Below the pieces are notes generated by a model. The model had not been told where the DNA came from and did no database searches. It saw only the letters and a program-made list of their open reading frames with translations. Position numbers and translations under genes: made by a program. Positions 10,814-46,331 of a DNA stretch of 64,000 nucleotides are shown here, piece by piece. The stretch lies in the IMG/VR virus record IMGVR_UViG_3300047320_000285, positions 62,001-126,000 of that record. One strand, written 5' to 3'. Positions within the stretch are counted from its first letter, which is position 1. Each line of letters starts with the position of its first letter.

Positions 10814-11161
10814 ATGGAACCGATCACCTGTCCTCAGTGCGGTAATGACGTCCGCTTCCAAGATCTCGAATACGGTCAGGAAGAGGAACACTACAGCGGC
10901 TTTCGATGTCCCCATTGCGGGGGTGTAGGAATACGCATGAGTGTGTACAAGGAAGAGCCACTGCCGTGCTTTACCTATCCATACTTCATGCCGTTTGACC
11001 TTGCTGGAAGATTGCAGTTTGTCAGTGGCGAATGTCGGCGAGATGCGTTTACGTTTGTTTCCAAAAGCGGCGTCTCCCGACTGGATCGTGAACTGGTCAC
11101 ACAACTCAGGGCCTTACCCGAGCCTGAGGAAGAACCCGATTTCATCTGCTACTTTCACTGA
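10814..11161 (+). CDS. Zn-ribbon protein with C-terminal EPDFICYFH tag
   Basis: RBS AAGGAG; CPQC...CPHC. Confidence 0.75.
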   Translation: MEPITCPQCGNDVRFQDLEYGQEEEHYSGFRCPHCGGVGIRMSVYKEEPLPCFTYPYFMPFDLAGRLQFVSGECRRDAFTFVSKSGVSRLDRELVTQLRALPEPEEEPDFICYFH

Positions 11162-11235
11162 CTCCTGACCCTTCCCGGTATTGGGAGGGGTCTTATGTTG
11201 TACGCTGTACTTAAGATAACCAAGAAGGAAAGACC

Positions 11236-11559
11236 ATGGAACAACGTAGAAGGCGCCGCAGCAAACCACGCAGTGAGCGCAGTGAACCCGCCGCCAAGAA
11301 GGTGTCGTTTATCCAGCTCATGAGCTGGGAGGCGGAGTTCGCGGCGAGCGGCCGGGAAAAAGTGGAGCAGTATGGCGCAGCTTTCTGCAAGGATTTCGAG
11401 ATTGACGACGCACGACTGATGCAAGCGCCGCCGATTGTGGCGCGACAAATCATCTTCGGTCGTTACGTCACTACGGATACGAGGTATCATCAAAATGCAC
11501 ACCCCGCTGTCGAGGACCTCGCAGAGCTATATCCGGAAACAACGGTGAACGAGTCATGA
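11236..11559 (+). CDS. hypothetical protein
   Basis: RBS AAGGA; Arg-rich N-terminus. Confidence 0.7.
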   Translation: MEQRRRRRSKPRSERSEPAAKKVSFIQLMSWEAEFAASGREKVEQYGAAFCKDFEIDDARLMQAPPIVARQIIFGRYVTTDTRYHQNAHPAVEDLAELYPETTVNES

Positions 11560-12188
11560 GAGAAGACGATCAACTTGTGAAAGATTGGCGAGCCAAATAC
11601 GCCAGACATCTACGCAATGCAAAAGCGCGCGGCATTGTCAGTAATCTTTCGTTTGAACAGTACATGGCAAAAATCAAGGAAGGAGGAGTAATTCTTCCGG
11701 AGCAAGTTGGTCGTCGCTCCGATCAAATGCAGTTAAGTCGTGTCGGGGACGAAGGTGCGTATGACGTAGATAACTGTCGTTTTATTACCAGTCGTCAAAA
11801 TCATCAAGAAGCTTTTATTAACGGTCGCTGTGACAATGCTTTGTTAAGAACCGCAGAAGCTCGTCGTGGCGCTACTATGGAGACCCATCCTTATTTGGCC
11901 GAGATGGCGAACAAGCTGAGAGGACGGACCAAGGAAACTCACGAACACCTCGCTATTGTCTCAGCTAAAACCGCTGAGAATCAAAGCAAAGACTTTTCCA
12001 TCTGGACTCCAGATGGCATAAATCACGAAGGCAGGGATCTGAAAAGGTTTTGTATAGAACGTAATCTGAATCCTCGTGGTATGAGTCGGGTTTGTCGTGG
12101 AGAAAGAAAACAATACAGGGGGTGGACTGGTCAGTGGCTAGAACCAACTCCTGACTTTTCAGGATTCTTCCATGAACCCGAAATCTAA
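11556..12188 (+). CDS. free-standing HNH-like homing endonuclease with 18-aa repeats and NUMOD1-like HTH
   Basis: RVGDEGAYDVDNCRFITSRQN nuclease-like motif; GRTKETH repeats; AT-richer codons; paralog of 45687..46331. Confidence 0.7.
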   Translation: MREDDQLVKDWRAKYARHLRNAKARGIVSNLSFEQYMAKIKEGGVILPEQVGRRSDQMQLSRVGDEGAYDVDNCRFITSRQNHQEAFINGRCDNALLRTAEARRGATMETHPYLAEMANKLRGRTKETHEHLAIVSAKTAENQSKDFSIWTPDGINHEGRDLKRFCIERNLNPRGMSRVCRGERKQYRGWTGQWLEPTPDFSGFFHEPEI

Positions 12189-12567
12189 TACTGCTCAATC
12201 TTACATATTGTCGATCCGGACCCCGCTGGAGGAGTTCTTCCGACGGCAACGGCTTGATCCCCGGATTGACCAGATCGACTGGTACACCATCGACCGCATG
12301 ATCGAACACACGTGGTATGCGTTGATCTATCCGAACACCACCTTTAGCGGCCTGATGAATCTGGCGTGTCGCTTAAAAGATCGTGAGCATCCGTACGCCA
12401 TGAGCGTGCTGAACTTCGGTCATTGGGTGAAAAACGAACTCGAGCAGTTTGATCTGTTCGCTGATGACGTCTACGTGAGCACCTACCATTACGCAGGCAT
12501 GCATGGGCGGTGGGCGATTCGGATTAAACGCGGCTTTGAAGACCATCTCAGACTGACGGTTTATTAG
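12172..12567 (+). CDS. hypothetical protein
   Basis: 131-aa ORF with phage-like codon usage. Confidence 0.65.
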   Translation: MNPKSNTAQSYILSIRTPLEEFFRRQRLDPRIDQIDWYTIDRMIEHTWYALIYPNTTFSGLMNLACRLKDREHPYAMSVLNFGHWVKNELEQFDLFADDVYVSTYHYAGMHGRWAIRIKRGFEDHLRLTVY

Positions 12568-12576
12568 GGAGGTAAC

Positions 12577-12966
12577 GTGACGGATCTGTTGTTAGTGGAC
12601 TTTCATGAGACCATGCCGGTCTTCCGAGAAATCGTCGAACAGATGCACGAGTGTGAGTCAGACGAGGATGAAGTGATGGAGATGCTCATCACCTATCTGG
12701 ATAGTCTGGAGCTGGTGGACCAAGGACTGGACGCCTATGCGGAGCGGATCTGGGAAGACCACATGATCGCGGGCTGTCCGCAAGACGGGGCGAGGTTAAT
12801 CGAAGGCGCCATGATGCTCGGTAACCATCTGTTCGATGTGTTAAAGCGAGCTGATGTCTACGATGCCGAGGGTTGGCTCGGTGGGCTGCACTTCGAAGGC
12901 TGGCGGGGCCGCAACAAGACGGTCGCGGTATTCAAGCGTGATCCGGAGGAGGAACGTTGCTGCTAA
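12577..12966 (+). CDS. acidic hypothetical protein
   Basis: RBS GGAGG before GTG. Confidence 0.75.
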   Translation: MTDLLLVDFHETMPVFREIVEQMHECESDEDEVMEMLITYLDSLELVDQGLDAYAERIWEDHMIAGCPQDGARLIEGAMMLGNHLFDVLKRADVYDAEGWLGGLHFEGWRGRNKTVAVFKRDPEEERCC

Positions 12967-12967
12967 A

Positions 12968-13003
12968 GCATAGCCCTGCCCAGAAGGGCAGGGCAAATAT
13001 GCC
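12968..13003. terminator. GCATA-hairpin-TATGCC element (bidirectional form)
   Basis: GCATA GCCCTGCCC-AGAA-GGGCAGGGC AAATATGCC. Confidence 0.75.
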
Positions 13004-13053
13004 GCTTCTTTTTTTGGTGATCTTATGACAATTCTCTTACCAACGGGGTACCT

Positions 13054-13971
13054 ATGTCATTGCAAGATCAATTGGCTGCACTCAATACTTCGGTCGAAGG
13101 AGTGGGCACCGCCATTGCTGCCAAGGATACCGCCTTGGAAAATCAGGTCACCACACTCGGTAACACGGTGAGCAACATCGCGCTGGTGCGCGGATTGTTC
13201 AACGCGCTGCAAGTTGCTGCTACGGGTCTGGACGCGAACGTCAATGTCCAAGCCCAAGAGATGGTGCTCAAGGATGGCGCCGGTCACGTGGTCGTGATTG
13301 CTAACGTGAACGTGACGGCGGCGACCAAAGCCGCTGGTCAGGCAGGCACCGGTGCTAACAGTCTGGACACCGGCAACTTTGCCTCGAATACGTGGTATGC
13401 GTTGTTTGTGGCGTATAACTCGTCGGGTGCGACCGCCTGTGCGTTGTTGTCCCTGAGTGCGACTGCGCCCACGCTACCGGCAGGCTTTACGTTCTACACC
13501 CGGGTGGGCTGGATTCGTACCGACGCCACCGCCAACGCTCGCCCGCTTGCCTTCACGCAAAAGGGTGCGCAAGCTCGCTACAAAGTCACCCCCGGTTCGA
13601 ACGTTGCAGCGATGCCAATTATCGCTTCAGGGGCCGCAGGTGACTGCACGATCCCGACGTGGGCGCCGCTGGACTGGCGACCGTTTGCACCCCCGACGAC
13701 GATTGACTTGACGTTGCTGACGGGTTCGAACGGTAATGCCTGTACGGTGATGGTGGCCCCGAACAACAATTTCGGGGCGTGGAACTCGGTGTCGAACCTG
13801 CCACCAGTGATGCATTCGAACGTGGGCTCGTACCTGTTCACGGACGATAACATCGCAGTGGAGTCCACCAACATCTACTGGGCCTCAAACGCGGGGGCTC
13901 AACCCCCCACGCCGGGGACGTCGGGTAATTCCGGCATTCTCTGCGTGATGGGCTGGACGGATAACATCTAA
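13054..13971 (+). CDS. tail fibre-like virion protein
   Basis: Ala/Gly/Thr/Asn-rich; LSLSATAPTLPAGFT..RVGWIRTD fibre motif; TATG 27 nt upstream; N-terminus shared with 35324..35824. Confidence 0.65.
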   Translation: MSLQDQLAALNTSVEGVGTAIAAKDTALENQVTTLGNTVSNIALVRGLFNALQVAATGLDANVNVQAQEMVLKDGAGHVVVIANVNVTAATKAAGQAGTGANSLDTGNFASNTWYALFVAYNSSGATACALLSLSATAPTLPAGFTFYTRVGWIRTDATANARPLAFTQKGAQARYKVTPGSNVAAMPIIASGAAGDCTIPTWAPLDWRPFAPPTTIDLTLLTGSNGNACTVMVAPNNNFGAWNSVSNLPPVMHSNVGSYLFTDDNIAVESTNIYWASNAGAQPPTPGTSGNSGILCVMGWTDNI

Positions 13972-13980
13972 CATGCCCAC

Positions 13981-14016
13981 GGCATAGGACCCGGCCAGCA
14001 GGCCGGGCTTTATGCC
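13981..14016. terminator. GGCATA-hairpin-TATGCC element
   Basis: GGCATA..CCCGGCC-AGCA-GGCCGGG..TTTATGCC. Confidence 0.8.
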
Positions 14017-14063
14017 AATTACTTTTTAGTGAACCACATCATGGTCTGGTAATACCGGGTTGC

Positions 14064-14423
14064 ATGATTTTTCGAACCTATATCATCACTCGGAGCAGTT
14101 ATGGAAGGTTCATACTGGGGAGTAGCATCATGTCTGACGTCGTGCTCGTTCCGTTCCGTCTGCATGCACGGGTAAGTGTGGTGAGCCAAGTTCGTCAGGA
14201 CCGACTGACGCGACCGGAGATGTTTCCACTGGTCGCGCATGTGACTGAGTCCCTCACAGAAGGGCCGCCAGCAGCGCTTAAGCAGGAATTGGAAAACCAG
14301 CTGTTGAATGCTTTTACTCAAGTGTTTCTCAATCGACTTAGGGAGGACGCACGATTGAGGCAGAAAATCGGTGGGACCAAGTGGCAGATACAGATTCACG
14401 AGTATAGCTACAAACGGGTGTAA
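14064..14423 (+). CDS. hypothetical protein (start uncertain)
   Basis: ORF track; the internal ATG with GGGGAG RBS may be the true start. Confidence 0.55.
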   Translation: MIFRTYIITRSSYGRFILGSSIMSDVVLVPFRLHARVSVVSQVRQDRLTRPEMFPLVAHVTESLTEGPPAALKQELENQLLNAFTQVFLNRLREDARLRQKIGGTKWQIQIHEYSYKRV

Positions 14424-14463
14424 TACGCGTTTAATACGATAATCAAAAATTCAGGATTGAAAG

Positions 14464-14817
14464 ATGCCGTACGTAATCGAAGCCGCTAAGAATGGTCACG
14501 ACGATCGCTATATCGGTCAAAGTGATGTCACGCAGCACATGTACTGGACCCGCAGCTTGCGCATGGCGTGCAAGTTTGAGGATCTGGACCTGTTGCGGCG
14601 GATGTTGGACAACATCATGGACGACGAACACAACCGCGACATTTCCGTCTTGGTTGCAGCGTTCGGCCTGATGAACAAGCCGGGTCCGCATTCAATGATG
14701 TTAATGATTCGTGAAGTCCTCCCAGATGGGTCACTGGGAGACTTTTGCGATCAACATGGGATCCGTTATCAGATTAAGAAGGAGCCTCGGGTAGTACCGA
14801 TTCCTATTCCTGCGTAA
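14464..14817 (+). CDS. hypothetical protein
   Basis: RBS AGGA, 117 aa. Confidence 0.7.
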   Translation: MPYVIEAAKNGHDDRYIGQSDVTQHMYWTRSLRMACKFEDLDLLRRMLDNIMDDEHNRDISVLVAAFGLMNKPGPHSMMLMIREVLPDGSLGDFCDQHGIRYQIKKEPRVVPIPIPA

Positions 14818-14852
14818 CGATCGGACTACCCTCTAACAAGAGGGGATGAATA

Positions 14853-15326
14853 ATGTCGCAGTTCTGTGTCATTAGCTTTCGGTTCTGCACGGGTGCGCCG
14901 AAGTATCTGGTGGCGCGCAATGGTGTACTGGTTGACTGGACCTTCGATCTGTCGAAGGCCGCGCAGTATGAGGGCATGCTTGATGCTGATACCCATTACC
15001 TGTGGGTGGTCGAATGTCTCAAGGGCGGGAATACCACGGCCAAGGTCTATCCCGAAGTACTTGCCCCACTGCATAACAACCAGTTCAGCTTGATCGAACT
15101 GGCGATTGACCGCGTCGTACTGGGTCCCAAAAAGACCGAGCACATCGCCCTGCGGCGGGTTCATATTGACTTACTCTCTATCACAAGGAAAGCGTTCCAT
15201 GTCTTACCGGATAAGAATCACGCGACCCGAACACCCGCAAACGTTACTCCGCATCAACCGCGACGAGAAATACCTCGTGCAGAGTTACCAAGAAGTGTAC
15301 CGTGGAAGAGAAGCGTCGGAGTTTGA
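14853..15326 (+). CDS. hypothetical protein
   Basis: RBS GAGGGG; the 3' part overlaps the next gene. Confidence 0.6.
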   Translation: MSQFCVISFRFCTGAPKYLVARNGVLVDWTFDLSKAAQYEGMLDADTHYLWVVECLKGGNTTAKVYPEVLAPLHNNQFSLIELAIDRVVLGPKKTEHIALRRVHIDLLSITRKAFHVLPDKNHATRTPANVTPHQPRREIPRAELPRSVPWKRSVGV

Positions 15327-15711
15327 CTTCGTTGACTTCGCCAAAGCCATCGTGCAGCAATTGCGCGATGCACGCCACGACAGTGAGACGTCTGCGGCTA
15401 AAATAGCGTGGGCGTTCAAAGTCGCGATTCTGCGCTTCGAGCCGTGGAAGAAATACGAACCCACGGCCGAAGAAATCGAGCAGGGTTATCTGCCGATGCT
15501 CGATGAAGAAACCGCGCCGGAAGATTGGGAACGGCGGATGATTACCGGGGCGACCTTGGACATCCTCGGCGGCGGGCATGTGTTTGAAAGTTACCCGTTC
15601 GAGATCCCGGCGGATTTCGATGTGGCAACTTTGGCGCCGCTGGAGTACGTCCACAGCAAAGCCGATCCAGCGCAGTTGCAAGCGCTGGTGGCGAAGTTCC
15701 GTAAGCAGTAA
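15199..15711 (+). CDS. hypothetical protein
   Basis: RBS AAGGA before ATG 15199. Confidence 0.7.
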   Translation: MSYRIRITRPEHPQTLLRINRDEKYLVQSYQEVYRGREASEFDFVDFAKAIVQQLRDARHDSETSAAKIAWAFKVAILRFEPWKKYEPTAEEIEQGYLPMLDEETAPEDWERRMITGATLDILGGGHVFESYPFEIPADFDVATLAPLEYVHSKADPAQLQALVAKFRKQ

Positions 15712-15775
15712 CGCAGGACGGGTGGCGTAAAAACCCACCCGCGTGACATTTTCCTTATACTACTAAGAAGAGCTG

Positions 15776-17500
15776 ATGATGAGCAACCTGTCTGCAAAAA
15801 GCCTGTCCCAACTCAGTACCTTGATCAAGACTGCTGACCTCACCGCCTTGGAACTGACCTATACGGGTCCGGGTCTGGACGAACGTCTGGCGGCGACACC
15901 GTTGACCGAACCGCTGCACAAAGTCATCAATGCCGTGTTGCGTGATCAGAAAGGTCGTACTTCGCTGGAGATCCACGAAATCGTCAAGGAGCGCGGTTTC
16001 ACGGAACAGGATGTGCGCGTGTGCATGCAGAACATCTATAAGCGCAAACTGGTGATTACACTGCCCAGCGAGATCGGGCGGATCGCGTACCGCATGGCAG
16101 GTCGTGGGGAGTTCTGGCCCGATGACATTGTCTCGCCGACCCCGGCTGTGACGTCGGCGATGGCTAACAAGCTGTCGAAGAAGAGCATCGAGCTGCCCGC
16201 GTTCGATGCGAAGATCGATCCGAACAAGGACATCGTGCCGGGGGACCGGATTGAACTGGCCATCTGGAAGTTGTTTGGTGATGGTGAAGGTCGCCGGATG
16301 CCAGAGATCGTCGATGCGCTCAAGCCGTATCAGTACGACCCCAAGCGCGTCAAAGATGCCATGCGTCGTTTGTCTACGCTGCGCTGGTTCGAGTTCACCA
16401 CCGGTCACAGCAGCGTGACCTACAAGCTGAAAGAGGGAATCCCCATGCCGTATGGTACAACTTCATTGGAAGCCGCTCCGGTGGATATTCCGGCCCCGGT
16501 GTTGGATCTGCAAAAAGACGGCATTCGCCGCACGCTGTGGAAGATCATGTCGGACTTCAAGCCACGCACCAACGTGGAGATCGCCGAGATCCTCGCGCCG
16601 ATGTGTGATTCGACTGCGTATCTGAAGTACGAGATGATGCAGCTGGTGAAGCTTGGTTGGTTCCTGCGTAACGAAACCAACCACCCGGTGAACCAGTATC
16701 TGATCATCATCTATACGCTCAAGGACTCGATCAAGCGTCCGGACGCCGAGCCGCTCACCGCGAAGAGCAAGTTCTATCGGGCGCCGACCCTGACCTCTCT
16801 CGAAACGCTCGACGCGATTCATGCGGCGATCAACGACGGCCAGCCAGATCTTACCTCGATGATTGGCTCAGCACCGGCTCAGGCTTCGTTGTTGCCGCCT
16901 GCGGCCAGCGAGCCGGGGGACCTGAACGTCGCGCGCAATCTGGGTCTGCAAGCGACCAACGTGCATCAGTTCCGTCACCCGGATGCGAATCCAGCAGCAG
17001 CTGAAGCCGCAATCCGTACCTCGAAGCTCTCCGCAGGGGCGCGTGAGTTTCATGCGCTGCACAGCAATGGCATCGTCCCGCAGACCACCGGTTACAGCGT
17101 CAAGGAACCGGTGATTGCGGATGGGCTGATCATCACCGCACCGGCAGACGGTCCGCTGCGTAGTAATGAGGTGCAGCTGAAGGATCGCGCCATCCTTCAC
17201 AACCCGCCCGAGTGGGTAGGCATGGACGAGATGGTCAGTGCGGTGCAAGCGATCAAAGATGCGATGCCGCTGGTCGAGCACTGTGTCTATATCCGTGGCA
17301 AGCGTATCGATGCGGATCAGGCCGATGCGCTGGTGGAAGAACTCAGCGACCTTGGCATGGGTGATGAGCGCCAGATGATCCAGTCGCCGCTCGTGAAGGT
17401 CAAGCTGGAAATTGCCGGGATGGAATTCAGGCTCGATGAAGTCGACCAGATCGTGCTGTACCTGAAGAGCGAAGGCTTCGGCAAGAGCCGCAAACACTAA
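15776..17500 (+). CDS. protein with three tandem winged-helix-like repeats (putative DNA-binding)
   Basis: Three repeats of I/L..W.L..D..GR...EI...L......V...M..L....WF. Confidence 0.7.
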   Translation: MMSNLSAKSLSQLSTLIKTADLTALELTYTGPGLDERLAATPLTEPLHKVINAVLRDQKGRTSLEIHEIVKERGFTEQDVRVCMQNIYKRKLVITLPSEIGRIAYRMAGRGEFWPDDIVSPTPAVTSAMANKLSKKSIELPAFDAKIDPNKDIVPGDRIELAIWKLFGDGEGRRMPEIVDALKPYQYDPKRVKDAMRRLSTLRWFEFTTGHSSVTYKLKEGIPMPYGTTSLEAAPVDIPAPVLDLQKDGIRRTLWKIMSDFKPRTNVEIAEILAPMCDSTAYLKYEMMQLVKLGWFLRNETNHPVNQYLIIIYTLKDSIKRPDAEPLTAKSKFYRAPTLTSLETLDAIHAAINDGQPDLTSMIGSAPAQASLLPPAASEPGDLNVARNLGLQATNVHQFRHPDANPAAAEAAIRTSKLSAGAREFHALHSNGIVPQTTGYSVKEPVIADGLIITAPADGPLRSNEVQLKDRAILHNPPEWVGMDEMVSAVQAIKDAMPLVEHCVYIRGKRIDADQADALVEELSDLGMGDERQMIQSPLVKVKLEIAGMEFRLDEVDQIVLYLKSEGFGKSRKH

Positions 17501-17555
17501 CGCGCGCACCGGTCCCGCTCCCAGCGGGACCTTTGTGCCTGACAAGGAGAATACC

Positions 17556-37578: not shown

Positions 37579-37582
37579 GCCC

Positions 37583-38321: not shown

Positions 38322-38329
38322 CTACGCTC

Positions 38330-38674: not shown

Positions 38675-38676
38675 TC

Positions 38677-39030: not shown

Positions 39031-39097
39031 CGCTAAGCGCACGCGGGGGCCTTCGGGTCCCCGGTTATTTCTCACCCTTTCTTTTTTGGCCCTGATA

Positions 39098-39406: not shown

Positions 39407-39410
39407 GCCC

Positions 39411-39436
39411 GCCACCCTCAGGGGTGGCTTTATGCC
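39411..39436 (+). terminator. hairpin + TATGCC terminator-like element
   Basis: GCCACCC-TCAG-GGGTGGC TTTATGCC. Confidence 0.75.
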
Positions 39437-39486
39437 CCATGATGTGGTGTAACTACACAGCGGCGTGAGAAGCGCTCGAGATCACT

Positions 39487-39807
39487 ATGATGAGTATCTT
39501 AAAATTTCTGACGCGACTCAATCCGTTGGGTCCGGGCTTCCAGAAAGTCATGAGCGACTGCTTTACGTCGTGGAATGGTGACTGGGATCCGAGCCGTCTG
39601 TTCGGCTATCTGTTTGCGATCGTTGTCTCTATCCAGTTCGTCGCGCAATCCGCCTACGACCTGATCAAGAACGGTCACTGGGATCCGATGAACTACTCGC
39701 TGGCAGCAGCGGGGATTGGCGGTATGTACGCGGCAGTCGCGGCGGGCGTACGTATCAAATCGCAAACCGAAAATCCGGCGGGTACACCGCCTTCAGACCG
39801 GGGTTGA
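39487..39807 (+). CDS. two-TM membrane protein (holin-like)
   Basis: Two hydrophobic helices, WDP.R and charged C-terminus. Confidence 0.55.
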   Translation: MMSILKFLTRLNPLGPGFQKVMSDCFTSWNGDWDPSRLFGYLFAIVVSIQFVAQSAYDLIKNGHWDPMNYSLAAAGIGGMYAAVAAGVRIKSQTENPAGTPPSDRG

Positions 39808-39940
39808 CCATGTATCTGTGCCTTCCGTTTAACTTTTTGTCGATGTTCTGGTGCGGTATTATGATGGCCGGCATGCGTCAGACGTTCTCGACCGAGCCAC
39901 CCAAGACCAAAAAGAAACAAGCCGACTAACCGGCTACGGG

Positions 39941-39969
39941 GCCTCGTCTGCGGACGGGGCTACTATGCC
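39941..39969 (+). terminator. hairpin + TATGCC terminator-like element
   Basis: GCCTCGTC-TGCG-GACGGGGC TACTATGCC. Confidence 0.7.
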
Positions 39970-40030
39970 CCTAGATTTTTTACAGTGCGAGACCATCTGA
40001 TGCAAACAGAACGCTAATAAGGAGAGCATC

Positions 40031-40786
40031 ATGACTACCGCTACTGTGGAGAAGCAAGTCCCTGTGGATCTGGATTCTAACGTTCCTTTGACTCACGTGG
40101 CCTTGGAAGTCTTTCTGCATGAGAAGCTGGACATGCCGTCAGCGGCCATCTACGAAACCCGTGCCTATATTTCGAATCTGTTACTCGGTCGTAACCAGAA
40201 ACCGACCATGACAGATTCGATGATGGCCGAGCGCATGTACCAGAACCACGAATTCGATCGCTTCTGGTACTACCCAGAATGGACCACGCACGACGATCGA
40301 AGCTACACGCTGCACGTGCGGGTGGTGGAGCGTGAAGGTCATGTGCCGAAAGCGGCCGCTTTTGGGGACCTGATCTTTACCGTGGAATGGGAAGGAGGGA
40401 TGCGCGGTAACTGTGTGCTGGTCAGTGGCTGGACCCGTGACATCGTTTCGAACTTCGATGGCTTTCGAGTATTCGACGATTGCCAAGGGTTTGAAAGCAA
40501 CCGGTGCTGGCCGTGGGTCGTACGTTTGCCGCGCGACATTCGGGCATGGGCAGGCAATGCCTCGGCCGATTACTACGAGAAGTTCTTGGCCTACGCGCAG
40601 GAACTGATGACGCGAAAGGTGGCCGAGGAAGTCATGGTCAAATTGGCACCCCATTCCACAGGTGGACCGGGTCGTCCCGAGAAAGTGCGATTGATTGTAC
40701 AAATGCATCGCGGCCCCGTGCAGTTGGCGGGTTTTACGACAGTCGCGGAATTCAACGAAGTCCTCACCAAGGAACAGCAACAATGA
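40031..40786 (+). CDS. hypothetical protein
   Basis: AAGGAG RBS, 251 aa. Confidence 0.75.
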
Positions 40787-41286
40787 CACGCGTAGCACTG
40801 AAAACGAATCACGGCACGATCACCCTCGAACTCGACGCCGACAAAGCCCCGAAGTCGGTGGCGAACTTTCTCGAGTACGTCAAGAAGGGCCACTACGACG
40901 GCACGATCTTCCACCGGGTGATCGATGGCTTCATGATTCAAGGCGGTGGCTTCACGGAAAAGCTCGCGCAGCAAAAGCCCACCGAAGCCCCGATCGCGAA
41001 CGAAGCCAACAACGGCCTGAAAAACGACGCCGGCACGATCGCGATGGCGCGAACCAACGACCCGCACTCGGCCACCGCGCAGTTCTTTATCAACGTCAAC
41101 AACAACGACTTCCTCAACCACTCATCGCCGACCCCGCAAGGCTGGGGCTACGCGGTGTTCGGCCGTGTCGTCGAAGGTCTGGAGATCATCGAGGCCATCA
41201 AGAAGGTCAAGACCGGCTCGAAGGGCTTCCATCAGGACGTACCGATGGACGACGTGGTGATCGAATCAGCCGTCGTCGTCGAATAA
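40783..41286 (+). CDS. ppiB: cyclophilin-type peptidyl-prolyl cis-trans isomerase
   Basis: [47 protein letters not shown]. Confidence 0.95.
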
Positions 41287-41333
41287 GCTTTCATCTCGTA
41301 GTCCCCTACTGATCAATAAGGAGAACAGGCAAC

Positions 41334-42464
41334 ATGAGCGACGCAATTATCAAATACGAACGCACCGAGCAAGGTGTGCGCATTGTTCCCGTGTATCGGG
41401 AAGAAACGAAGGACTACTTCGTCGATCTGTCGAAGATCGCGCCATGGCTCGTTGAAGTCGATGGCGTCGAAGTACAGACCGCAGCCCTGAAGATCGGCAC
41501 GCTTTTCGATCTGCTTGGCATCAGCCAGACGCAGTCGTTGCTCGACACCGGCGTGCTCGACATGACCGATTCGCTCGACCCGAACATCGCGCTCGAATCG
41601 ATCTTCGTCGAAGCGAAGTATCCGGACGGCACGTCGAAAGTCCAGCGCTACGAACTCGTGCACGATACGGGTGATCAGCAGGTCGGCACGCAGTTCACGT
41701 TCTTGGCACAGAACCATCGCCAGCTGGAAGTGAGCTACCACACCAACACGCTGCTCTCGCCGTCGGCTAACTCAGCGATGGATCTGCATGTCGCCGGTAT
41801 CATCAACCTCCAGCTGGGTCACTGCGAACTGGTGGCCTCGGGCGTGCAAGCGGGTACGGAACCCGACGTCGAACACGAAGTGATCGGCTATACGCTCAAA
41901 GCTTTCCGCACGAACTACAACCGTCGGCCGGTTGAGATTCCGGCAGTCTGGCCGGAAGGCGAAGCAGTGTTGAAGCAGCCGGAAGCCGAGCAGGAAGCAG
42001 CACCGGAAACACCGGAAGTGATCAGCGCGTTCTCGGGTAAGGAATACATGCCGGGTTACTTCAACCAAGGCAAGCACATCACGTCCCACGAAGTCGAAGG
42101 TGCGGCCAGCAACCTGACGATCACGGTCGGCGATGAACCGGCCGTTCCCGGCAACGCCAACCACCGCTACGACATCACGGGTTTCGATACCGACTCGAAC
42201 GCATCGGAATACGAAGGTTCGTTTGCGCGTGCGTTGTCGATTCTGTTCCAGAACGGTCCGATCCCGTCGCATGGCAATAACGGTGTGACGCTCGAAGCGT
42301 TGCTCGCCGTGGCAGCACATCGTCTGGAAGGTTTCCAAGCGGGTCCGTTCGCTTCGCAGGACAACGAAGACGCCCTCAGTCACATCAAGATGGCGCTCGA
42401 AGCTTTGCAGCGCCGGACTCGCAATCGCATCGCCCGTGAGGTCGAGGGCACCTATCAAGCCTAA
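41334..42464 (+). CDS. fusion of phiKZ-type major-capsid-like domain and Tad1-like anti-defence sponge
   Basis: C-terminus GNANHRY..I.FQNGP....NGVT.E.LL.V..HRL..FQAGPFAS.DN..AL.HI..AL.....RT.NRI.R.VEGT matches the Tad1 pattern; N-terminus RIVPVYR..., DLLGISQT..LL..GV.D.TD.LDP.I.L, IGY.L.A.RTN.NRR recalls phiKZ gp120-family capsid. Confidence 0.75.
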   Translation: MSDAIIKYERTEQGVRIVPVYREETKDYFVDLSKIAPWLVEVDGVEVQTAALKIGTLFDLLGISQTQSLLDTGVLDMTDSLDPNIALESIFVEAKYPDGTSKVQRYELVHDTGDQQVGTQFTFLAQNHRQLEVSYHTNTLLSPSANSAMDLHVAGIINLQLGHCELVASGVQAGTEPDVEHEVIGYTLKAFRTNYNRRPVEIPAVWPEGEAVLKQPEAEQEAAPETPEVISAFSGKEYMPGYFNQGKHITSHEVEGAASNLTITVGDEPAVPGNANHRYDITGFDTDSNASEYEGSFARALSILFQNGPIPSHGNNGVTLEALLAVAAHRLEGFQAGPFASQDNEDALSHIKMALEALQRRTRNRIAREVEGTYQA

Positions 42465-42473
42465 GGAGGCAGC

Positions 42474-42878
42474 ATGTCCGAGAGTGCATTGGAAAGAACC
42501 ATTCGCGAAGCGTTTGAAGATGGTACGTTAGCCGTCTTGCGTACCCCTGAAGAACTCGGCGAATTGCTGGTGAGTACCCCCGGTGCACCATCGGGTACCC
42601 GGACGTTTCTCGTTACCGCGGTGGATGATCTGAACGAGTTGTCACCGGTGGAGGTTTTGGCAGGACAGGTGTTTGAAGCTCGGCGTGCCATGGCTCGTCA
42701 AATAGCTGATGGGACGGTCCCCCAAGATCATCCGATGGCGCATCGGTATTCGGGTCCGGGTTACACCGATGGCGTACATGAGTCGCAGCAACGGATTCTG
42801 GGGCAGTCGGTGGAAGTCCGGGTGGCGCATGTGCTGAACGCTGCTAAATGGGCGGTCATCGAACAGGGGGATCACTGA
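42474..42878 (+). CDS. hypothetical protein
   Basis: AAGGAGG RBS. Confidence 0.75.
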   Translation: MSESALERTIREAFEDGTLAVLRTPEELGELLVSTPGAPSGTRTFLVTAVDDLNELSPVEVLAGQVFEARRAMARQIADGTVPQDHPMAHRYSGPGYTDGVHESQQRILGQSVEVRVAHVLNAAKWAVIEQGDH

Positions 42879-43165
42879 TGGCGTTGTGGGGTTTGGAATT
42901 CATGACACCGTCCGCATGGGGCAAGCGCTTTCCGGGTCGGCTTCCCAAGGCGTCGTCACTGGAAGCGATCACAGCACCAGATCGCCGCGCTCCGCCATCC
43001 ACACCCGAAGTCGCACCCGCGTTGCCTGCTTTGAAGGAATTGAATCAGGCCATCGAGCGTGCGGCCAAGGCGTGGAATCGCACGCAGTTGATTGACGCGA
43101 TGCGTTCGGTGAAGTACTGGACCCAGCAGGTAGAGCAGGCCGCCAAGATCGTAGACCTGACCTAA
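42878..43165 (+). CDS. hypothetical protein
   Basis: TGATG coupling. Confidence 0.7.
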   Translation: MALWGLEFMTPSAWGKRFPGRLPKASSLEAITAPDRRAPPSTPEVAPALPALKELNQAIERAAKAWNRTQLIDAMRSVKYWTQQVEQAAKIVDLT

Positions 43166-43175
43166 GGAGACCACC

Positions 43176-43469
43176 ATGCATGTGCTCAACACTTTCCCTA
43201 TTAACAACTGGGCCACCCCGACGTTATCGGAGCCGTCTATCCGGGTGCCGCAAGGCTCGGATCTGATTACGGCGTTTGATGACTTTGTGGGCGACATCCG
43301 GGTGGCGTATTGCGGCGACCCCACGCAGCCCGAGGTGATTGTGTACTTCCGGGTCTATACGGACGGGGCCATGATCGATCCGCGCGAGCTGAAAGAGTGG
43401 CGGCATCTGGCCAGCTTCTTTCATCGCGAGCAGAACAAGACCATGCATGTGTTCTACCGGCCGTTCTGA
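43176..43469 (+). CDS. hypothetical protein
   Basis: AAGGAG RBS. Confidence 0.75.
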   Translation: MHVLNTFPINNWATPTLSEPSIRVPQGSDLITAFDDFVGDIRVAYCGDPTQPEVIVYFRVYTDGAMIDPRELKEWRHLASFFHREQNKTMHVFYRPF

Positions 43470-43482
43470 AGCTTTATCTATA

Positions 43483-43976
43483 TAGAGGCGGCTGCCGCAG
43501 TCAGGTGTCCTTTAACAGTGCTTCGAGGCCTGCCGAAATCATCCGGCTGCGAAGGCTGCTTCTAACTGACATGAGCTGTTCAACGGCTCAGTGGCTCGAG
43601 GACTCACGATTTACTCGGGCTGATCCATTGTTCCGACTGGATCCCGTTACGGGGAGAACGACGGTAAATCGTACGGTAGGTGCGTAACACACCTGCAAGT
43701 TGTCCGTGTTAGTCCGAACGCGTTGCCTTAACGGCCTAGCGTGCTTGCCCCGCCGCGTATGCGGCACCTGTTGGGGCGCGTGTGATTGCCTGCGGTTCGT
43801 CCGCCGGGCGTTGCACTGGGCGGCTACATGCTGCCCGCGAAGCATGTGTGGCTGGCGAGCATGTCGGGCTGAATGTGCAGCCTCTAGGGTTCTTCCGTTA
43901 AACCGGAATATACGAGTGAGAGCCCCTGAGGAAGTGCATTCGAATCGTTCGAGACCATCCTCTAACCCCGTAGGGG
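43483..43976 (+). ncRNA. putative large structured ncRNA 1 (~490 nt), unknown class
   Basis: No RBS-supported ORF over ~590 nt; end pairing TAGAGG/CCTCTA; more than 10 helices including ACGATTTAC/GTAAATCGT; downstream terminator. Confidence 0.7.
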
Positions 43977-44003
43977 CTTTTTGATTCGTTCTATCGACGC
44001 TTC

Positions 44004-44040
44004 GTCATACGGGCCGAGCCTTCGGGCTCGGCTTTATGAT
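44004..44040. terminator. TCATA-hairpin-TATGA element
   Basis: GTCATAC GGGCCGAGCC-TTCG-GGCTCGGC TTTATGA. Confidence 0.8.
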
Positions 44041-44063
44041 GTCAATTTCTTTGTGAGACGACC

Positions 44064-44261
44064 ATGCCTGTCTTTGACATTACCAAAGGCCAGTTCCTGA
44101 CCCTGCAACAAGTCGCGGATAAACTGAAGCTGCGGCTGCCGCAATTGGGTAACATGATTGCCCAGCGGGCGTTCCCGAGTTCCGACAAGACGGTTAATGG
44201 TGTGCAGTACTGGAACCAACGTACTGTGCAAACGTGGCTGGGGAGCCAGCCAACTAAATAG
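44064..44261 (+). CDS. AlpA/excisionase-like small HTH protein
   Basis: FLTLQQVADKLKL...L..MI....FP......YW....VQ.WL. Confidence 0.75.
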   Translation: MPVFDITKGQFLTLQQVADKLKLRLPQLGNMIAQRAFPSSDKTVNGVQYWNQRTVQTWLGSQPTK

Positions 44262-44293
44262 ACCATTCGTATTCCCGTTTGAGGGGGTTCACC

Positions 44294-44515
44294 ATGTCGA
44301 CCATTCCGCTCAGCAGCACCCGGATGATCACGGCGCATCGCGTCATGGATAAGCTCAAAATCAGTCGTGCGATGTTACGCAAACTGATTGCCACCGGCCA
44401 GTTCCCTAAGTCCTCGAGTGAGGTGGGGCAGGCACGCTGGGAAGAGCAGACAGTCGACCAATGGTTGCGCTCCAACAAACAGAATCCCGTCACCCGTAGA
44501 AGAGGCGAACAATGA
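44294..44515 (+). CDS. AlpA-like small HTH protein
   Basis: V..KL.ISRA.L.KLIA.GQFPK.......RW....VDQWL; GAGGGG RBS. Confidence 0.8.
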   Translation: MSTIPLSSTRMITAHRVMDKLKISRAMLRKLIATGQFPKSSSEVGQARWEEQTVDQWLRSNKQNPVTRRRGEQ

Positions 44516-44814
44516 AAGGCACACGCGTATGGCCGGGTGATGACGGACGGCTGAACAGAACCGAGATCAACGCGCCGGGGGCGTATGGCAAACCGCATCC
44601 CCGCATGCTGGAGCGCTTACCGGCGCACTTACGTCAGGCTGACTCCCGCATGCTGTTCTGGGAAGTCACCGCCCCGGACGGCAGCAGCATTATCCTCAAC
44701 CCCGCGATTCACGAAGTCACGGAGTACGAGAATGGGACCATCACCGTATACCCATCGATTGTCACGCCGTCTTGGCACGGCTGGCTTGAATGCGGTACGT
44801 GGCGTTCAGTTTAG
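44512..44814 (+). CDS. DUF6527-like protein
   Basis: H.VTE..NGTITV.PSI....WHGWL..G.W. Confidence 0.55.
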   Translation: MKGTRVWPGDDGRLNRTEINAPGAYGKPHPRMLERLPAHLRQADSRMLFWEVTAPDGSSIILNPAIHEVTEYENGTITVYPSIVTPSWHGWLECGTWRSV

Positions 44815-44822
44815 GAGCAGCA

Positions 44823-45221
44823 ATGAATAATAAACCTGAGTTCATGAACTGGGCGCTGGAGTCGCTGGCGCACAAACCCCTCGCGATTGTGATCATGGGC
44901 AACCCGCGTTACATCGACGACCCCAAGCTTCGTGTGAAAGCCACCGCCCTGTATTGCAAGATCAAGATGTTCCTGCAAAATCGCTACGAGGTGCGTTTCG
45001 ATGCGGGCAAACCCTTCACGCTACCGGATACCCATGCCCAGCTGTGGGTCGCGCATTCGCGGGGGATCGATCGTCTGCAGTACGCCCCCAAGGGTATCAA
45101 GACGATTGCCTTGCAGACGCAGGACCACGATCAGCAGTACGAGACGGATGATCAGCGCGGGCGTGACCCGCTGCACTACGAATTGTCCGAGCAGGATGTC
45201 AAGGCCCTTATGTCTGCTTAA
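44823..45221 (+). CDS. hypothetical protein (AHSRG hydrolase-like elbow)
   Basis: AGGAG RBS. Confidence 0.7.
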   Translation: MNNKPEFMNWALESLAHKPLAIVIMGNPRYIDDPKLRVKATALYCKIKMFLQNRYEVRFDAGKPFTLPDTHAQLWVAHSRGIDRLQYAPKGIKTIALQTQDHDQQYETDDQRGRDPLHYELSEQDVKALMSA

Positions 45222-45234
45222 AGGAGTCAGGCGG

Positions 45235-45474
45235 ATGGATCTGGTAGTCAACAAGCGTTATTACGCTCAAGTCGAAGAGTTGCCCGAGTGGAAACTTACA
45301 CACTTGCACAATGAAGCAGTGCACGAAATCCGCCGGCTCGAAGCGCGGATGCTGCATCACGACAAGCTGCGGCTGAAATACCAGTCGCTCCCTATGTTGC
45401 GACGCCTGATTCTGGTGCGAGACACGTTAAAGGAACTCCTCGATGACCTCCTCTACTGGCAAGAAGCTGCCTAG
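45235..45474 (+). CDS. small coiled-coil hypothetical protein
   Basis: AAGGAG RBS; similar to the next gene. Confidence 0.7.
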   Translation: MDLVVNKRYYAQVEELPEWKLTHLHNEAVHEIRRLEARMLHHDKLRLKYQSLPMLRRLILVRDTLKELLDDLLYWQEAA

Positions 45475-45703
45475 CATTGACGTGCGGATTAACGGTAAGA
45501 ACTACCGCAACATCCGCACCTTCTCGCAGGCCCGCCTTGAACACATCCTGCAGTTGGCCAAGACGCAGGTGGACGACTACCGACGGTGCTACACGGACTT
45601 TGACGAACAAGCTGCCAAGAAAGCCTCTATTTTGGTCCATCTGAATGGACTGGAACAACGCGTGAAACTGATCGAAGAGGTGTTAAATGGGTTGGGAGGA
45701 TAA
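45443..45703 (+). CDS. small coiled-coil hypothetical protein (paralog of upstream gene)
   Basis: IDVRINGKNYRNI..F....LEH aligns with MDLVVNKRYYAQV..L....LTH. Confidence 0.6.
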   Translation: MTSSTGKKLPSIDVRINGKNYRNIRTFSQARLEHILQLAKTQVDDYRRCYTDFDEQAAKKASILVHLNGLEQRVKLIEEVLNGLGG

Positions 45704-46331
45704 GTACCGTAGACATACCTACGCGGCAGAACAACGCGGTATGGATACCAGCCTGACCTTCGATCAGTACATGACAAAGGTCAGGGAGGCTGGTATCGAA
45801 AACCCTGACCAGATCGGTAAGAGAGCGGGTCAGTTTCAGCTAGGGAGAGTCGGTGACGTCGGTCGTTATGAAGACGCTAACTGTCGCTTCATCACGGCTC
45901 GTCAGAATCGGCAAGAGTGTTTCCAGAACGGCCGTCATCTTGAAGGAATGAAGCGTCTATCGGAGCTTCGAACCGGTCAGACCAAAGATGTCTCGGAGTG
46001 GGCTAGAAAAATCTCGCAGACTCTTACTGGTAGGACGAAGGAAACCGATCCGGGTTTGGCAGCAATGGCTGAGAAATTGAGAGGCCGTACGGCAAGCACA
46101 GACCCTAGCTTGGCTTCGGCCGCTGATAAAAAATCACGCGATTTCGTCTTGGTCTCCCCTGATGGACAGATTCATGAAGGAAGAAACATAAGCGAATTTT
46201 GTCGAAGTCAAGGACTTTCTCAGGGAAAGATGTCGGATGTCTGTCGCGGAGACAGGCGTCAGCATAAAGGCTGGACCGGCCATTATCTCCCAGACGAGCC
46301 CGACTTCGTCTGTTATTTTCATGACGACTAA
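45687..46331 (+). CDS. free-standing HNH-like homing endonuclease (paralog of 11556..12188)
   Basis: RVGDVGRYEDANCRFITARQN; three 18-aa GRTKET-type repeats; NUMOD1-like HTH; ends EPDFVCYFHDD. Confidence 0.7.
   Translation: MGWEDKYRRHTYAAEQRGMDTSLTFDQYMTKVREAGIENPDQIGKRAGQFQLGRVGDVGRYEDANCRFITARQNRQECFQNGRHLEGMKRLSELRTGQTKDVSEWARKISQTLTGRTKETDPGLAAMAEKLRGRTASTDPSLASAADKKSRDFVLVSPDGQIHEGRNISEFCRSQGLSQGKMSDVCRGDRRQHKGWTGHYLPDEPDFVCYFHDD

What the first reader, a model, noticed from the sequence alone, without database searches (positions are those of the whole stretch)
11132..46331. Shared C-terminal peptide tag (E)PDFxCYFH on unrelated proteins, conserved at protein level
Seen: the Zn-ribbon protein 10814..11161 ends EPDFICYFH* (11132-11158). 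The otherwise unrelated endonuclease-like protein 45687..46331 ends EPDFVCYFHDD* (46296-46322), and its paralog 11556..12188 ends PDFSGFFHEPEI* (12150-12173). Between the first two, 8 of 9 residues are identical while five codons differ synonymously (gaa/gag, gat/gac, tgc/tgt, tac/tat, cac/cat), so the peptide rather than the DNA is conserved. Inference: a portable docking motif. It could be analogous to the C-terminal clamp-binding motif shared by T4 gp33/gp55/gp43, an import signal for the phage nucleus, or a packaging tag or degron.
Basis: partly seen in the sequence, partly recalled or inferred. Interest (0 to 1): 0.75.

Follow-up and report, generated by a model that had tools for sequence, protein, structure and literature searches.

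The report
Shared C-terminal peptide tag in a jumbo phage
A nucleus-forming jumbo phage carries the same short, floppy C-terminal peptide on a small zinc-ribbon protein and on three of its five mobile homing endonucleases; the peptide itself is under selection, so it is probably a portable recognition tag, but what reads it is still unknown.

Summary
The window belongs to a 253.7-kb chimallivirus (nucleus-forming jumbo phage).

- **Where the tail occurs.** A position-matrix scan of all six frames finds the tail, consensus [DE]-P-[DI]-F-x-[CGA]-[YF]-F-H, exactly four times. Every hit lies 0-4 residues from a stop codon. The carriers are the Zn-ribbon protein and three of five I-HmuI-like HNH homing endonuclease (HEG) paralogs.
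- **The two families are otherwise unrelated.**
- **Zn-ribbon family.** It has five members, all from related phages. The tail is ancestral, predicted disordered, and always ends in His.
- **HEG family.** The protein normally stops at ...HKGWTGxY. The tail is an add-on seen only in this genome and, in degenerate form, in one relative. The HEGs are free-standing insertions absent from relatives.
- **Selection.** Zn and endoB tail DNA differ by five synonymous changes plus one I/V change. This argues for selection on the peptide.

Best reading: a portable recognition peptide that the mobile endonucleases share with, and probably copied from, a resident protein. The reader of the tag is unidentified. 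The two leading candidates are a phage-nucleus or replication-hub receptor and the host Lon protease. The Zn tail fits the published terminal-His degron, but the HEG tails are capped by acidic residues. A complex prediction with PicA and Rhc gave no answer.

The parts
10814..11161 (+). Zn-ribbon protein gene (115 aa). It belongs to a clade-specific family of five known members. GC3 is 0.54 against a genome norm of 0.73.
   Evidence: AF2 model: pLDDT 69, a Zn-ribbon plus beta-hairpins plus two short helices. No fold match was found.
11132..11158 (+). Tail motif EPDFICYFH. It is the extreme C-terminus of the Zn-ribbon protein and follows an acidic linker (PEPEEE).
   Evidence: Residues 104-115 have pLDDT below 50. 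The terminal His is invariant in all five family members.
11535..12208 (+). Free-standing homing-endonuclease cassette (endoA), 674 bp. It is absent from the related contig L001. It is inserted in the overlap of the two flanking genes.
   Evidence: junctions defined against L001 1472|1473. GC3 is 0.39.
11556..12188 (+). endoA ORF (210 aa), an I-HmuI-like HNH homing endonuclease paralog.
12150..12173 (+). Tail motif PDFSGFFH of endoA, followed by EPEI and the stop codon.
45687..46331 (+). endoB ORF (214 aa), an I-HmuI-like HNH homing endonuclease paralog. It has NUMOD3-type repeats and an I-HmuI NUMOD-like C-terminal domain.
   Evidence: (PF22083). AF2 pLDDT is 92. The best PDB match is I-HmuI 1u3e, E 1.6e-5.
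46296..46322 (+). Tail motif EPDFVCYFH of endoB, followed by DD and the stop codon. It is appended after the family's usual end, ...HKGWTGHY.
   Evidence: Residues 201-214 have no secondary structure, and pLDDT falls from 78 to 66.

Best explanation
The tail is a short linear recognition peptide: an acidic linker followed by P-[DI]-F-x-[CGA]-[YF]-F-H, on a disordered C-terminus.

It is an old, conserved feature of a small Zn-ribbon protein that this chimallivirus clade inherits vertically. A lineage of free-standing I-HmuI-like HNH homing endonucleases in the same phage has the same peptide bolted on beyond its normal C-terminus. The most likely route is a single capture from the resident gene, or adaptation towards its tail. 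The peptide has since been kept by selection.

Both kinds of protein would then be read by one receptor. In the endonucleases the Asp/Glu that always follows the His could stand in for the free carboxylate that follows it in the Zn protein.

I favour a receptor that gives access to the phage DNA: the nuclear import route or a replication or repair hub inside the phage nucleus. That is what a selfish endonuclease needs in a phage that walls off its DNA.

Shown: the motif, its position, its conservation, its add-on status and the mobility of the endonucleases. Inferred: the capture, the common receptor and its identity.
For: - **Exclusive C-terminal position.** Four of four hits lie 0-4 residues from a stop, and none occurs elsewhere in six frames.
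- **Disordered context in both folds**.
- **Zn family.** The tail is kept in all five members at 33-83% identity. It changes gradually (PDFICYFH, PDFVCYFH, PIMVGYFH, PDLVAEFH, PIPGEVH) and His is always last.
- **HEG family.** About 20 homologs end at HKGWTGxY plus 0-5 residues. Only the three paralogs of this genome and P0004 carry the extension.
- **Conservation among HEG paralogs.** They are only 43-50% identical overall but keep P..P[DI]F..[YF]FH[DE].
- **Selection on the peptide.** Five of six nucleotide differences between the Zn and endoB tails are synonymous.
- **The families are not homologous**.
- **The HEGs are mobile.** They have low GC3. endoA is absent from L001. endoC and endoD are absent from the syntenic sites of a relative with 70-90% aa identity.
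- **A single acquisition is not rejected** (AU p = 0.18).
- **The phage is a chimallivirus.** It has chimallin, PicA/Imp1 and Rhc homologs. Its DNA is therefore expected to be enclosed, and nucleases would need import (PMC12908238).
- **Published precedent.** Lineage-specific small import helpers that are themselves imported exist in phiKZ, for example Imp2 (10.1101/2024.03.27.586873).
Against: - No receptor was identified. The PicA + Rhc-CTD + Zn complex prediction scored 0.25, below the mark of 0.32, and by the tool's own terms is no evidence either way.
- Published work finds that phage-nucleus cargo is recognised by folded surface patches, not terminal signals (PMC12908238).
- Only four proteins carry the tag, whereas dozens must enter the nucleus. 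Two of the five HEG paralogs lack it.
- The invariant terminal His of the Zn family is explained better by the Lon degron class.
- There are only two independent families, and the HEG tree is unresolved.
- No close relative's whole proteome could be scanned.
- Pattern scans of public collections found no further carriers.
Confidence: 0.4

Rival explanations
1. Host-protease degron. The tail is a terminal-His Lon degron (class x-hydrophobic-hydrophobic-His-COOH, as in SulA, Smg, Y2853 and LarA). It would keep the Zn-ribbon protein short-lived, or let it engage or modulate Lon. The endonuclease tails would then be captured copies. They either still act as weaker internal aromatic degrons that limit nuclease toxicity, or have been neutralised by an acidic cap.
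For: - In the Zn family His is the last residue in five of five members despite indels upstream. The penultimate residue is F or V, and the antepenultimate is Y in three of five.
- The tail is unstructured and follows a helix, as described for LarA (PMC10665427).
- An acidic run before the tail resembles the Y2853 degron ...DEEEAPLTATSYPIIH (PMC11986505).
- The class is autonomous and transferable, and depends on the terminal His; His-to-Asp abolishes recognition (PMC11986505, PMC10665427).
- C-terminal His is over-represented among this phage's called genes: 16 of 270, against 2.2% composition and 2.8% in shadow ORFs (p = 4e-4 and 5e-3).
Against: - In all three endonucleases the His is internal and followed by acidic residues (HDD, HELE, HEPEI). 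The cited papers report that acidic C-termini are disfavoured by Lon, so the shared part of the motif is not explained.
- Conservation reaches eight or more residues upstream (P-D-F-x-C), more than the three residues that define the class.
- Two Zn homologs have Glu at the antepenultimate position.
- F at the penultimate position is not in the published consensus.
- The host and its Lon are unknown.
- The terminal His of other phage proteins is not conserved in their orthologs.
- A selfish endonuclease gains nothing obvious from a degron.
Confidence: 0.3
2. Historical remnant. An ancestral endonuclease cassette picked up the 3' end of the Zn-ribbon gene by illegitimate recombination or by insertion into that gene's 3' end. 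The tail then travelled with the cassette as it spread to new sites and has no present function in the endonucleases.
For: - endoA sits one gene (about 400 bp) downstream of the Zn gene.
- HEG cassettes here insert into gene ends and remodel the neighbours' termini.
- The tail occurs only in the HEG lineage that cohabits with the Zn gene.
- A single origin is not rejected.
Against: - Three paralogs that have diverged to 43-50% identity still keep the motif in register, without indels. An unconstrained disordered tail should have decayed.
- The changes against the Zn tail are mostly synonymous.
- endoB, the paralog with the tail closest to the Zn tail, lies 34 kb away from the Zn gene. endoA, the one next to the Zn gene, has the most divergent tail.
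Confidence: 0.15
3. Docking to a replication clamp-like or SSB-like hub in the manner of the T4 or T7 C-terminal tails. This is a specific form of the docking idea: the acidic-aromatic tail binds the Rhc clamp-derived domain, the DNA polymerase, or a host clamp or SSB partner site.
For: - The acidic linker plus aromatic tip resembles the C-terminal tails of T4 gp43/gp33/gp55, T7 gp2.5/gp4 and bacterial SSB (my own knowledge, not tested here).
- Rhc is reported as a hub predicted to bind DNAP-C, a RuvC-like nuclease and PicA (10.64898/2026.10.01.755736).
- An Rhc homolog is present.
Against: - The complex prediction that included the Rhc C-terminal domain gave no support, which is not evidence against.
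- There is no sequence match to the beta-clamp motif QL[SD]LF.
- No canonical sliding clamp was looked for or found.
Confidence: 0.1
4. Chance convergence, or a DNA-level element (a homing site, terminator or regulatory sequence) that merely happens to be translated.
For: Short aromatic-rich peptides can recur, and only two independent families are involved.
Against: - 8 of 9 identity is beyond all 20 shuffled sets.
- The four hits are far above background and all are terminal.
- The DNA differs at five synonymous sites while the peptide is kept.
- The motif is conserved in orthologs with different codons.
Confidence: 0.03

Closest known systems
Terminal-His Lon degrons (Sul20C of SulA, Smg, Y2853, ApaG, LarA)
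   Same: A short, autonomous, transferable C-terminal peptide on unrelated proteins. The tail is unstructured, hydrophobic or aromatic residues precede an invariant last-residue His, and an acidic run lies upstream in some members. The Zn-ribbon family matches this description (PMC11986505, PMC10665427).
   Different: The endonuclease copies have the His internal, followed by acidic residues. Conservation extends to P-[DI]-F-x-[CGA], further upstream than the defining three residues. Y-F and E-[FV] replace the published [LI]-[LIV]. The carrier is a phage whose host is unknown. No degradation data exist.
C-terminal hub-binding tails of phage replication and transcription proteins (T4 gp43/gp33/gp55 on the gp45 clamp; T7 gp2.5 and gp4 on the polymerase; bacterial SSB-Ct)
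   Same: Unrelated proteins of one phage share an acidic/aromatic C-terminal peptide that docks onto one hub. The tails are disordered and portable (from my own knowledge).
   Different: No clamp or hub partner was identified here. The sequence is different. The carriers are mobile endonucleases and a Zn-ribbon protein of unknown role, not core replisome parts.
[quoted passage not shown]
   Same: Same virus family. PicA, chimallin and Rhc homologs are present. Endonucleases must cross the shell to act. Small lineage-restricted helper proteins are known (10.1101/2024.03.27.586873).
   Different: Published cargo recognition is by folded surface patches, and no linear or terminal signal is known (PMC12908238). 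A terminal tag would be a new mode. It is untested here.
I-HmuI-type HNH homing endonucleases with NUMOD DNA-binding modules
   Same: endoA and endoB (shown) have the I-HmuI-like fold and NUMOD3-type repeats. endoA, endoC and endoD behave as free-standing insertions with presence/absence polymorphism. endoC is assigned to the family by paralogy.
   Different: The added C-terminal tail is not part of the family. The first His of the HNH motif is not conserved in these paralogs (read), so activity is unproven.

Membership tests
Terminal-His Lon degron class (x-[LI]-[LIV]-H-COOH; PMC11986505) | His is the ultimate residue of the protein. | tested here: inconclusive
   Met by the Zn-ribbon family, five of five members. 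Not met by the three endonucleases: the His is followed by DD, ELE or EPEI.
Terminal-His Lon degron class (x-[LI]-[LIV]-H-COOH; PMC11986505) | Two hydrophobic residues precede the His. | tested here: inconclusive
   Y-F in three Zn members, and E-F and E-V in the other two. Aromatic residues are not in the published consensus, although SulA and Smg have L-Y.
Terminal-His Lon degron class (x-[LI]-[LIV]-H-COOH; PMC11986505) | The tail is exposed and unstructured, so it can act autonomously. | tested here: met
   AF2: Zn residues 104-115 have pLDDT below 50. The endoB tail has no secondary structure. These are predictions only.
Terminal-His Lon degron class (x-[LI]-[LIV]-H-COOH; PMC11986505) | Lon-dependent degradation that is lost on a terminal His-to-Asp change. 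| not testable with these tools
   Needs in vivo half-life or in vitro Lon assays. The host is unknown.
Short linear docking motif (SLiM) shared by unrelated proteins | Short, in a disordered region, conserved as a peptide while the flanks vary. | tested here: met
Short linear docking motif (SLiM) shared by unrelated proteins | Occurs on non-homologous carriers. | tested here: met
   hhalign probability 0.9% between the families. The folds differ.
Short linear docking motif (SLiM) shared by unrelated proteins | A defined receptor binds it. | tested here: inconclusive
   PicA + Rhc-CTD + Zn complex: score 0.25, below the mark of 0.32, 'no answer'. Other candidates were not tested.
Phage-nucleus import cargo (Chimalliviridae, PicA-dependent) | The phage encodes chimallin and PicA/Imp1. 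| tested here: met
   Chimallin: phrog_4795, E 3.7e-77. PicA homolog: 26% identity to phiKZ gp69, E 1.6e-36, in conserved synteny gp65-gp75.
Phage-nucleus import cargo (Chimalliviridae, PicA-dependent) | The protein localises inside the nucleus in a PicA-dependent way. | not testable with these tools
   Needs microscopy of tagged proteins in infected cells.
I-HmuI-like HNH homing endonuclease (the carriers) | HNH (beta-beta-alpha-metal) nuclease fold plus NUMOD DNA-binding modules. | tested here: met
   Foldseek best hit 1u3e (I-HmuI), E 1.6e-5, probability 1.00. PF22083 at E 7.9e-5, below the Pfam cut-off. PHROG HNH endonuclease families.
I-HmuI-like HNH homing endonuclease (the carriers) | Catalytic His/Asn residues of the HNH motif. 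| tested here: inconclusive
   N74 and N81 are invariant, but the position of the first His varies among the paralogs. Pfam HNH and HNH_3 models do not ring in the genome.
I-HmuI-like HNH homing endonuclease (the carriers) | Mobile: presence/absence polymorphism at otherwise syntenic sites. | tested here: met
   endoA is absent from L001. endoC and endoD are absent from the Logan relative.

The most novel reading that the evidence does not exclude
The tail is a portable, linear targeting signal for the phage nucleus or for a hub inside it. It is used by a resident Zn-ribbon protein and was pirated by homing endonucleases so that they can reach the enclosed phage DNA. This would be the first terminal import or docking signal described for a chimallivirus, and the first case of a selfish endonuclease mimicking its host phage's targeting peptide.
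Probability: 0.15. Interest if true: 0.9.

Novelty: new variant of a known kind. Interest (0 to 1): 0.6.

Why it matters
Two groups state that no signal licensing proteins for entry into the phage nucleus is known, and that recognition relies on folded surfaces (PMC12908238; 10.1101/2024.03.27.586873).

A 9-residue peptide shared by mobile nucleases and a resident protein of a chimallivirus gives a cheap, direct test. Fuse it to a reporter, then check whether it moves the reporter into the nucleus, destabilises it, or pulls down a partner.

- If it is an import or hub tag, it would be a tool for delivering cargo into phage nuclei. It would also show how selfish endonucleases cope with compartmentalised DNA.
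- If it is a Lon degron, it shows a phage using the host's terminal-His degron code, and endonucleases carrying a capped copy of it.

Either way it is a clean natural example of a peptide module moving between unrelated genes.

Tried and rejected
1. **Degenerate DNA pattern for PDFxCYFH.** In viral contigs there were 4 hits. All are chance matches, internal or in non-genes, and none is related to this phage.

2. **Zn-ribbon homologs.** There are none in cultured phages and none in five IMG/VR chimalliviruses with 36-50% Rhc identity. The exhaustive HMMER search found only four credible relatives.

3. **Fold and atlas searches of the Zn protein.** Nothing significant was found, so its function stays unknown.

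4. **Hidden homology between the Zn protein's C-terminal half and the endonuclease NUMOD domain.** The BLAST hit is driven by the tail, and hhalign is negative. Rejected.

5. **Similarity to chimallin's own terminal segments.** None by eye.

6. **Searching the whole 243.8-kb relative (L141) for tailed endonucleases.** The record is not held. The 20 kb that is held has no HEG, and the neighbouring 347-aa gene is a DHH-type phosphoesterase.

7. **Other HEG families in the genome** (HNH, HNH_3, GIY-YIG). None found.

8. **Complex prediction.**
   - The accepted job gave 'no answer'.
   - Zn-endonuclease direct binding and other hubs were never run.

9. **Readthrough origin of the endonuclease extension.** Comparison with the DNA downstream of the Zn stop codon gave only a weak 3-4 nt resemblance. 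Not pursued.

10. **Tree of the endonucleases.** It is unresolved. Only the AU test is informative.

Full report
**What the window is**

The window is bases 62,001-126,000 of a single 253,740-bp virus record with 57% G+C. IMG/VR classes its ends as direct terminal repeats.

It is a nucleus-forming jumbo phage (chimallivirus).
- It encodes a chimallin (genome 232,875-234,851; phrog_4795 'nuclear shell protein', E 3.7e-77), split multisubunit RNA polymerase subunits, a phiKZ-type DNA polymerase and a tail sheath.
- It keeps the phiKZ gp65-gp75 gene order. That block includes a PicA/Imp1 homolog (genome 242,880-244,460; 26% identity to phiKZ gp69, E 1.6e-36).
- It has an Rhc (RNase H-clamp) homolog (genome 167,841-169,433).
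- The nearest cultured phage is Burkholderia phage FLC9, and it is distant.

**The observation**

Over the nine codons of EPDF[I/V]CYFH, the Zn-ribbon gene and endoB share 21 of 27 bases. They differ by five synonymous third-base changes and one conservative I/V change. If about a quarter of random changes were synonymous (my own assumed rate), five or more synonymous out of six has a probability of about 0.005 (hand calculation).

The motif is not a common word.
- PDF..[YF]FH occurs three times in the six-frame translation of the genome, each at these ends.
- A position matrix built from six tails finds four hits scoring 35-49. The best background score is 25. All four lie 0-4 residues from a stop codon in ORFs longer than 100 codons.
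- The fourth hit is a third endonuclease paralog outside the window (endoC, genome 6,565-7,257, minus strand, ending EEPIFSAYFHELE).
- In an all-against-all comparison of C-termini, 8 of 9 identities occur in only two of 36,585 pairs. Twenty shuffled sets never exceed 7.

**The carriers: endonucleases**

The endonuclease family has five paralogs in this genome. Three carry the tail and two do not: endoD, directly upstream of chimallin, and endoE.

The endoB model is confident (pLDDT 92). Its best match among solved structures is the HNH homing endonuclease I-HmuI (1u3e, E 1.6e-5), followed by the I-TevI DNA-binding domain and PacI. Pfam sees the I-HmuI NUMOD-like domain, and PHROGs sees HNH endonuclease families.

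The genes behave as free-standing homing endonuclease cassettes.
- Their GC3 is 0.39-0.51, against 0.73 +/- 0.05 for typical genes.
- A forest-soil contig with 78% nucleotide identity (L001) lacks endoA. The insertion is window 11,535-12,208. It has its own stop codon and sits in the overlap of the two flanking genes.
- A 112-kb contig from a relative with 70-90% protein identity lacks endoC and endoD at the syntenic sites.

No other homing endonuclease family was detected in the genome.

**The carriers: Zn-ribbon protein**

The Zn-ribbon protein is a different kind of gene. An exhaustive HMMER search of 1.8 billion representatives, plus the word-based search, finds only four credible relatives at 83, 65, 41 and 35% identity. 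At least three lie in syntenic contexts of related phages, one of them a 243.8-kb contig.

The model is moderate (pLDDT 69). It shows a Zn-ribbon, beta-hairpins, two short helices, and then residues 104-115 with pLDDT below 50. No fold or feature search gave a lead to its function.

The profiles of the two families are unrelated (hhalign probability 0.9%).

**Anatomy and history of the tail**

In the Zn family the tail is ancestral and drifts gradually...EEEPDFICYFH...EGPDFVCYFH...EPIMVGYFH...EPDLVAEFH...DPIPGEVH. Indels occur upstream, but His is always the last residue and F or V the one before it.

In the endonuclease family the alignment shows the opposite. About twenty homologs from other phages, including FLC9 and an IMG/VR relative, end at ...HKGWTGxY plus 0-5 residues. 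Only the three paralogs of this genome carry the extension, plus one homolog (P0004, EPDLTGCFPDE) with a degenerate form.
- P0004 sits at the endoE-equivalent site of a phage with about 55% protein identity.
- The three tailed paralogs are only 43-50% identical overall. They still keep P-x-x-P-[DI]-F-x-x-[YF]-F-H-[DE] in register. A disordered tail would not do that without constraint.
- Holding the four tailed sequences together as one clade is not rejected (AU p = 0.18), although the tree itself is unresolved.

The simplest history is one acquisition by a mobile endonuclease of a peptide that the resident Zn-ribbon protein already had, followed by spread of the cassette to new sites. The endonuclease tail closest to the resident one (8 of 9) belongs to the same genome. 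That fits either recent capture or adaptation to the same lineage-specific reader.

**What reads the tail**

This could not be settled. I tested one complex: the PicA homolog (22-row alignment), the Rhc clamp-derived domain (55-row alignment) and the Zn protein (5 rows). The score was 0.25, below the mark of 0.32. The tool states this is no evidence for or against binding.

The literature sets two frames.

[quoted passage not shown] Reviews state that cargo is recognised by surface residues of the folded protein rather than by a terminal signal. Small lineage-restricted helpers such as Imp2 exist, and an intron endonuclease is differentially imported between phiKZ and PhiPA3 (PMC12908238). Rhc is described as a hub with predicted partners that include a RuvC-like nuclease and PicA (10.64898/2026.10.01.755736). 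A homing endonuclease in such a phage can only act if it gets inside, so a borrowed access peptide makes biological sense. Against this, only four proteins carry it, two paralogs lack it, and it would contradict the current surface-patch picture.

- **Lon degron frame.** A published class of autonomous, transferable Lon degrons is defined by an invariant C-terminal His preceded by two hydrophobic residues. Examples are SulA ...LYH, Smg ...GLYH and Y2853 ...DEEEAPLTATSYPIIH. A His-to-Asp change abolishes recognition, and acidic termini are disfavoured (PMC11986505). The five-residue terminal-His tail of the small protein LarA is likewise transferable and binds Lon (PMC10665427). The Zn family fits this well: His last in five of five, F or V before it, an unstructured tail after a helix, and an acidic run upstream. 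The endonuclease tails do not fit, because their His is internal and always followed by Asp or Glu (HDD, HELE, HEPEI).

The acidic follow-on residue can be read in two ways. The side chain may mimic the free carboxylate for a reader that is common to both families. Alternatively, the endonucleases may carry a capped, Lon-resistant copy that is kept for another reason.

C-terminal His is enriched among this phage's genes: 16 of 270, against 2.2% composition and 2.8% in shadow ORFs. That His is not conserved in the orthologs I could check, so I give this little weight.

**Verdict**

The inference of a portable peptide module under selection is supported.

My estimates for what reads it:
- a common receptor tied to access to phage DNA (import route or nuclear hub): about 0.4
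- Lon-type terminal-His degron: about 0.3
- a clamp- or SSB-type hub, as a specific form of the docking idea: about 0.1
- a functionless remnant of capture in the endonucleases: about 0.15
- chance or a DNA-level element: about 0.03

The thing is a new variant of a known kind (C-terminal short linear motifs and degrons). The new part is a mobile endonuclease lineage carrying the tail of a resident phage protein inside a nucleus-forming phage. It is worth a bench test because the experiments are simple and bear on an open question.

**Limits**
- There are only two independent carrier families.
- No complete genome of a close relative could be scanned.
- The host is unknown.
- Gene calls outside the named ORFs come from my own codon-usage heuristic. 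It missed the low-GC3 genes, which were added by hand.

Noticed in passing
outside the window: genome 30,017-30,556, 30,626-31,153 and 147,692-150,052 (loci L004:10017-10556, L004:10626-11153, L008:7692-10052): A second shared C-terminal module. Two adjacent small paralogs (179 and 175 aa) and a 786-aa protein all end in ...LS[ST].....L[NS]GLVY[VT](E)QP. The similarity covers roughly the last 50 residues (35% identity, E 6.6e-4). It may be a structural attachment module.
   Followed up: partly
window 11535-12208, with flanking genes 11236-11559 and 12172-12567: The endoA cassette is inserted inside the 62-nt overlap of two conserved genes (L001 1180-1494 and 1433-1846). The upstream gene therefore gets a new C-terminus and stop from cassette DNA. 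The downstream gene's first in-frame ATG (12172) lies inside the endonuclease's tail-coding region.
   Followed up: partly
outside the window: genome 232,194-232,838 (L012:12194-12838), directly upstream of chimallin at 232,875: A tail-less paralog (endoD) sits immediately upstream of the chimallin gene. FLC9 gp383 has the same arrangement, upstream of a 641-aa gene that I did not identify. The closer Logan relative (L145) has no endonuclease there.
   Followed up: partly
L147-L155 (IMG/VR FLC9-like contigs), upstream of the Rhc match at position 501: In these roughly 310-kb relatives the Rhc reading frame stays open upstream into a sequence with a GIY-YIG-like motif (GVYAIHFP...DEVFFGQTK). 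This is either a nuclease fused in frame to Rhc or an adjacent gene with no intervening stop.
   Followed up: no
whole genome: C-terminal residues are skewed. Ala ends 19.6% of called genes (9.2% in composition) and His ends 5.9% (2.2%). The His excess is significant against shadow ORFs, but it is not conserved in the orthologs checked.
   Followed up: partly
outside the window: genome 8,747-10,591, minus strand (L003:8747-10591): The phiKZ gp82 (DNAP-N) match falls into two pieces (query residues 5-352 and 419-630) that meet at genome position about 9,420. The ORF caller gives one 614-aa gene. This may be a lineage-specific deletion or an insertion relative to phiKZ.
   Followed up: no
L002 (Logan SRR27594704 contig) and L140 (JGI 3300073837 contig): The degenerate endonuclease tail EPDLTGCFPDE (P0004) and the Zn-homolog tail EPDLVAEFH (P0032) both have PDL where this genome has PDF. 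Both come from phages at similar distance (flank identity about 55-58%). This may be co-variation, but the two contigs cannot be tied to one phage.
   Followed up: partly
window 11162-11200: A G+C-rich inverted repeat followed by a T run (GACCCTTCCCGGTATTGGGAGGGGTCTTAT) lies directly after the Zn-ribbon stop codon. It is conserved in L001 and looks like an intrinsic terminator.
   Followed up: no
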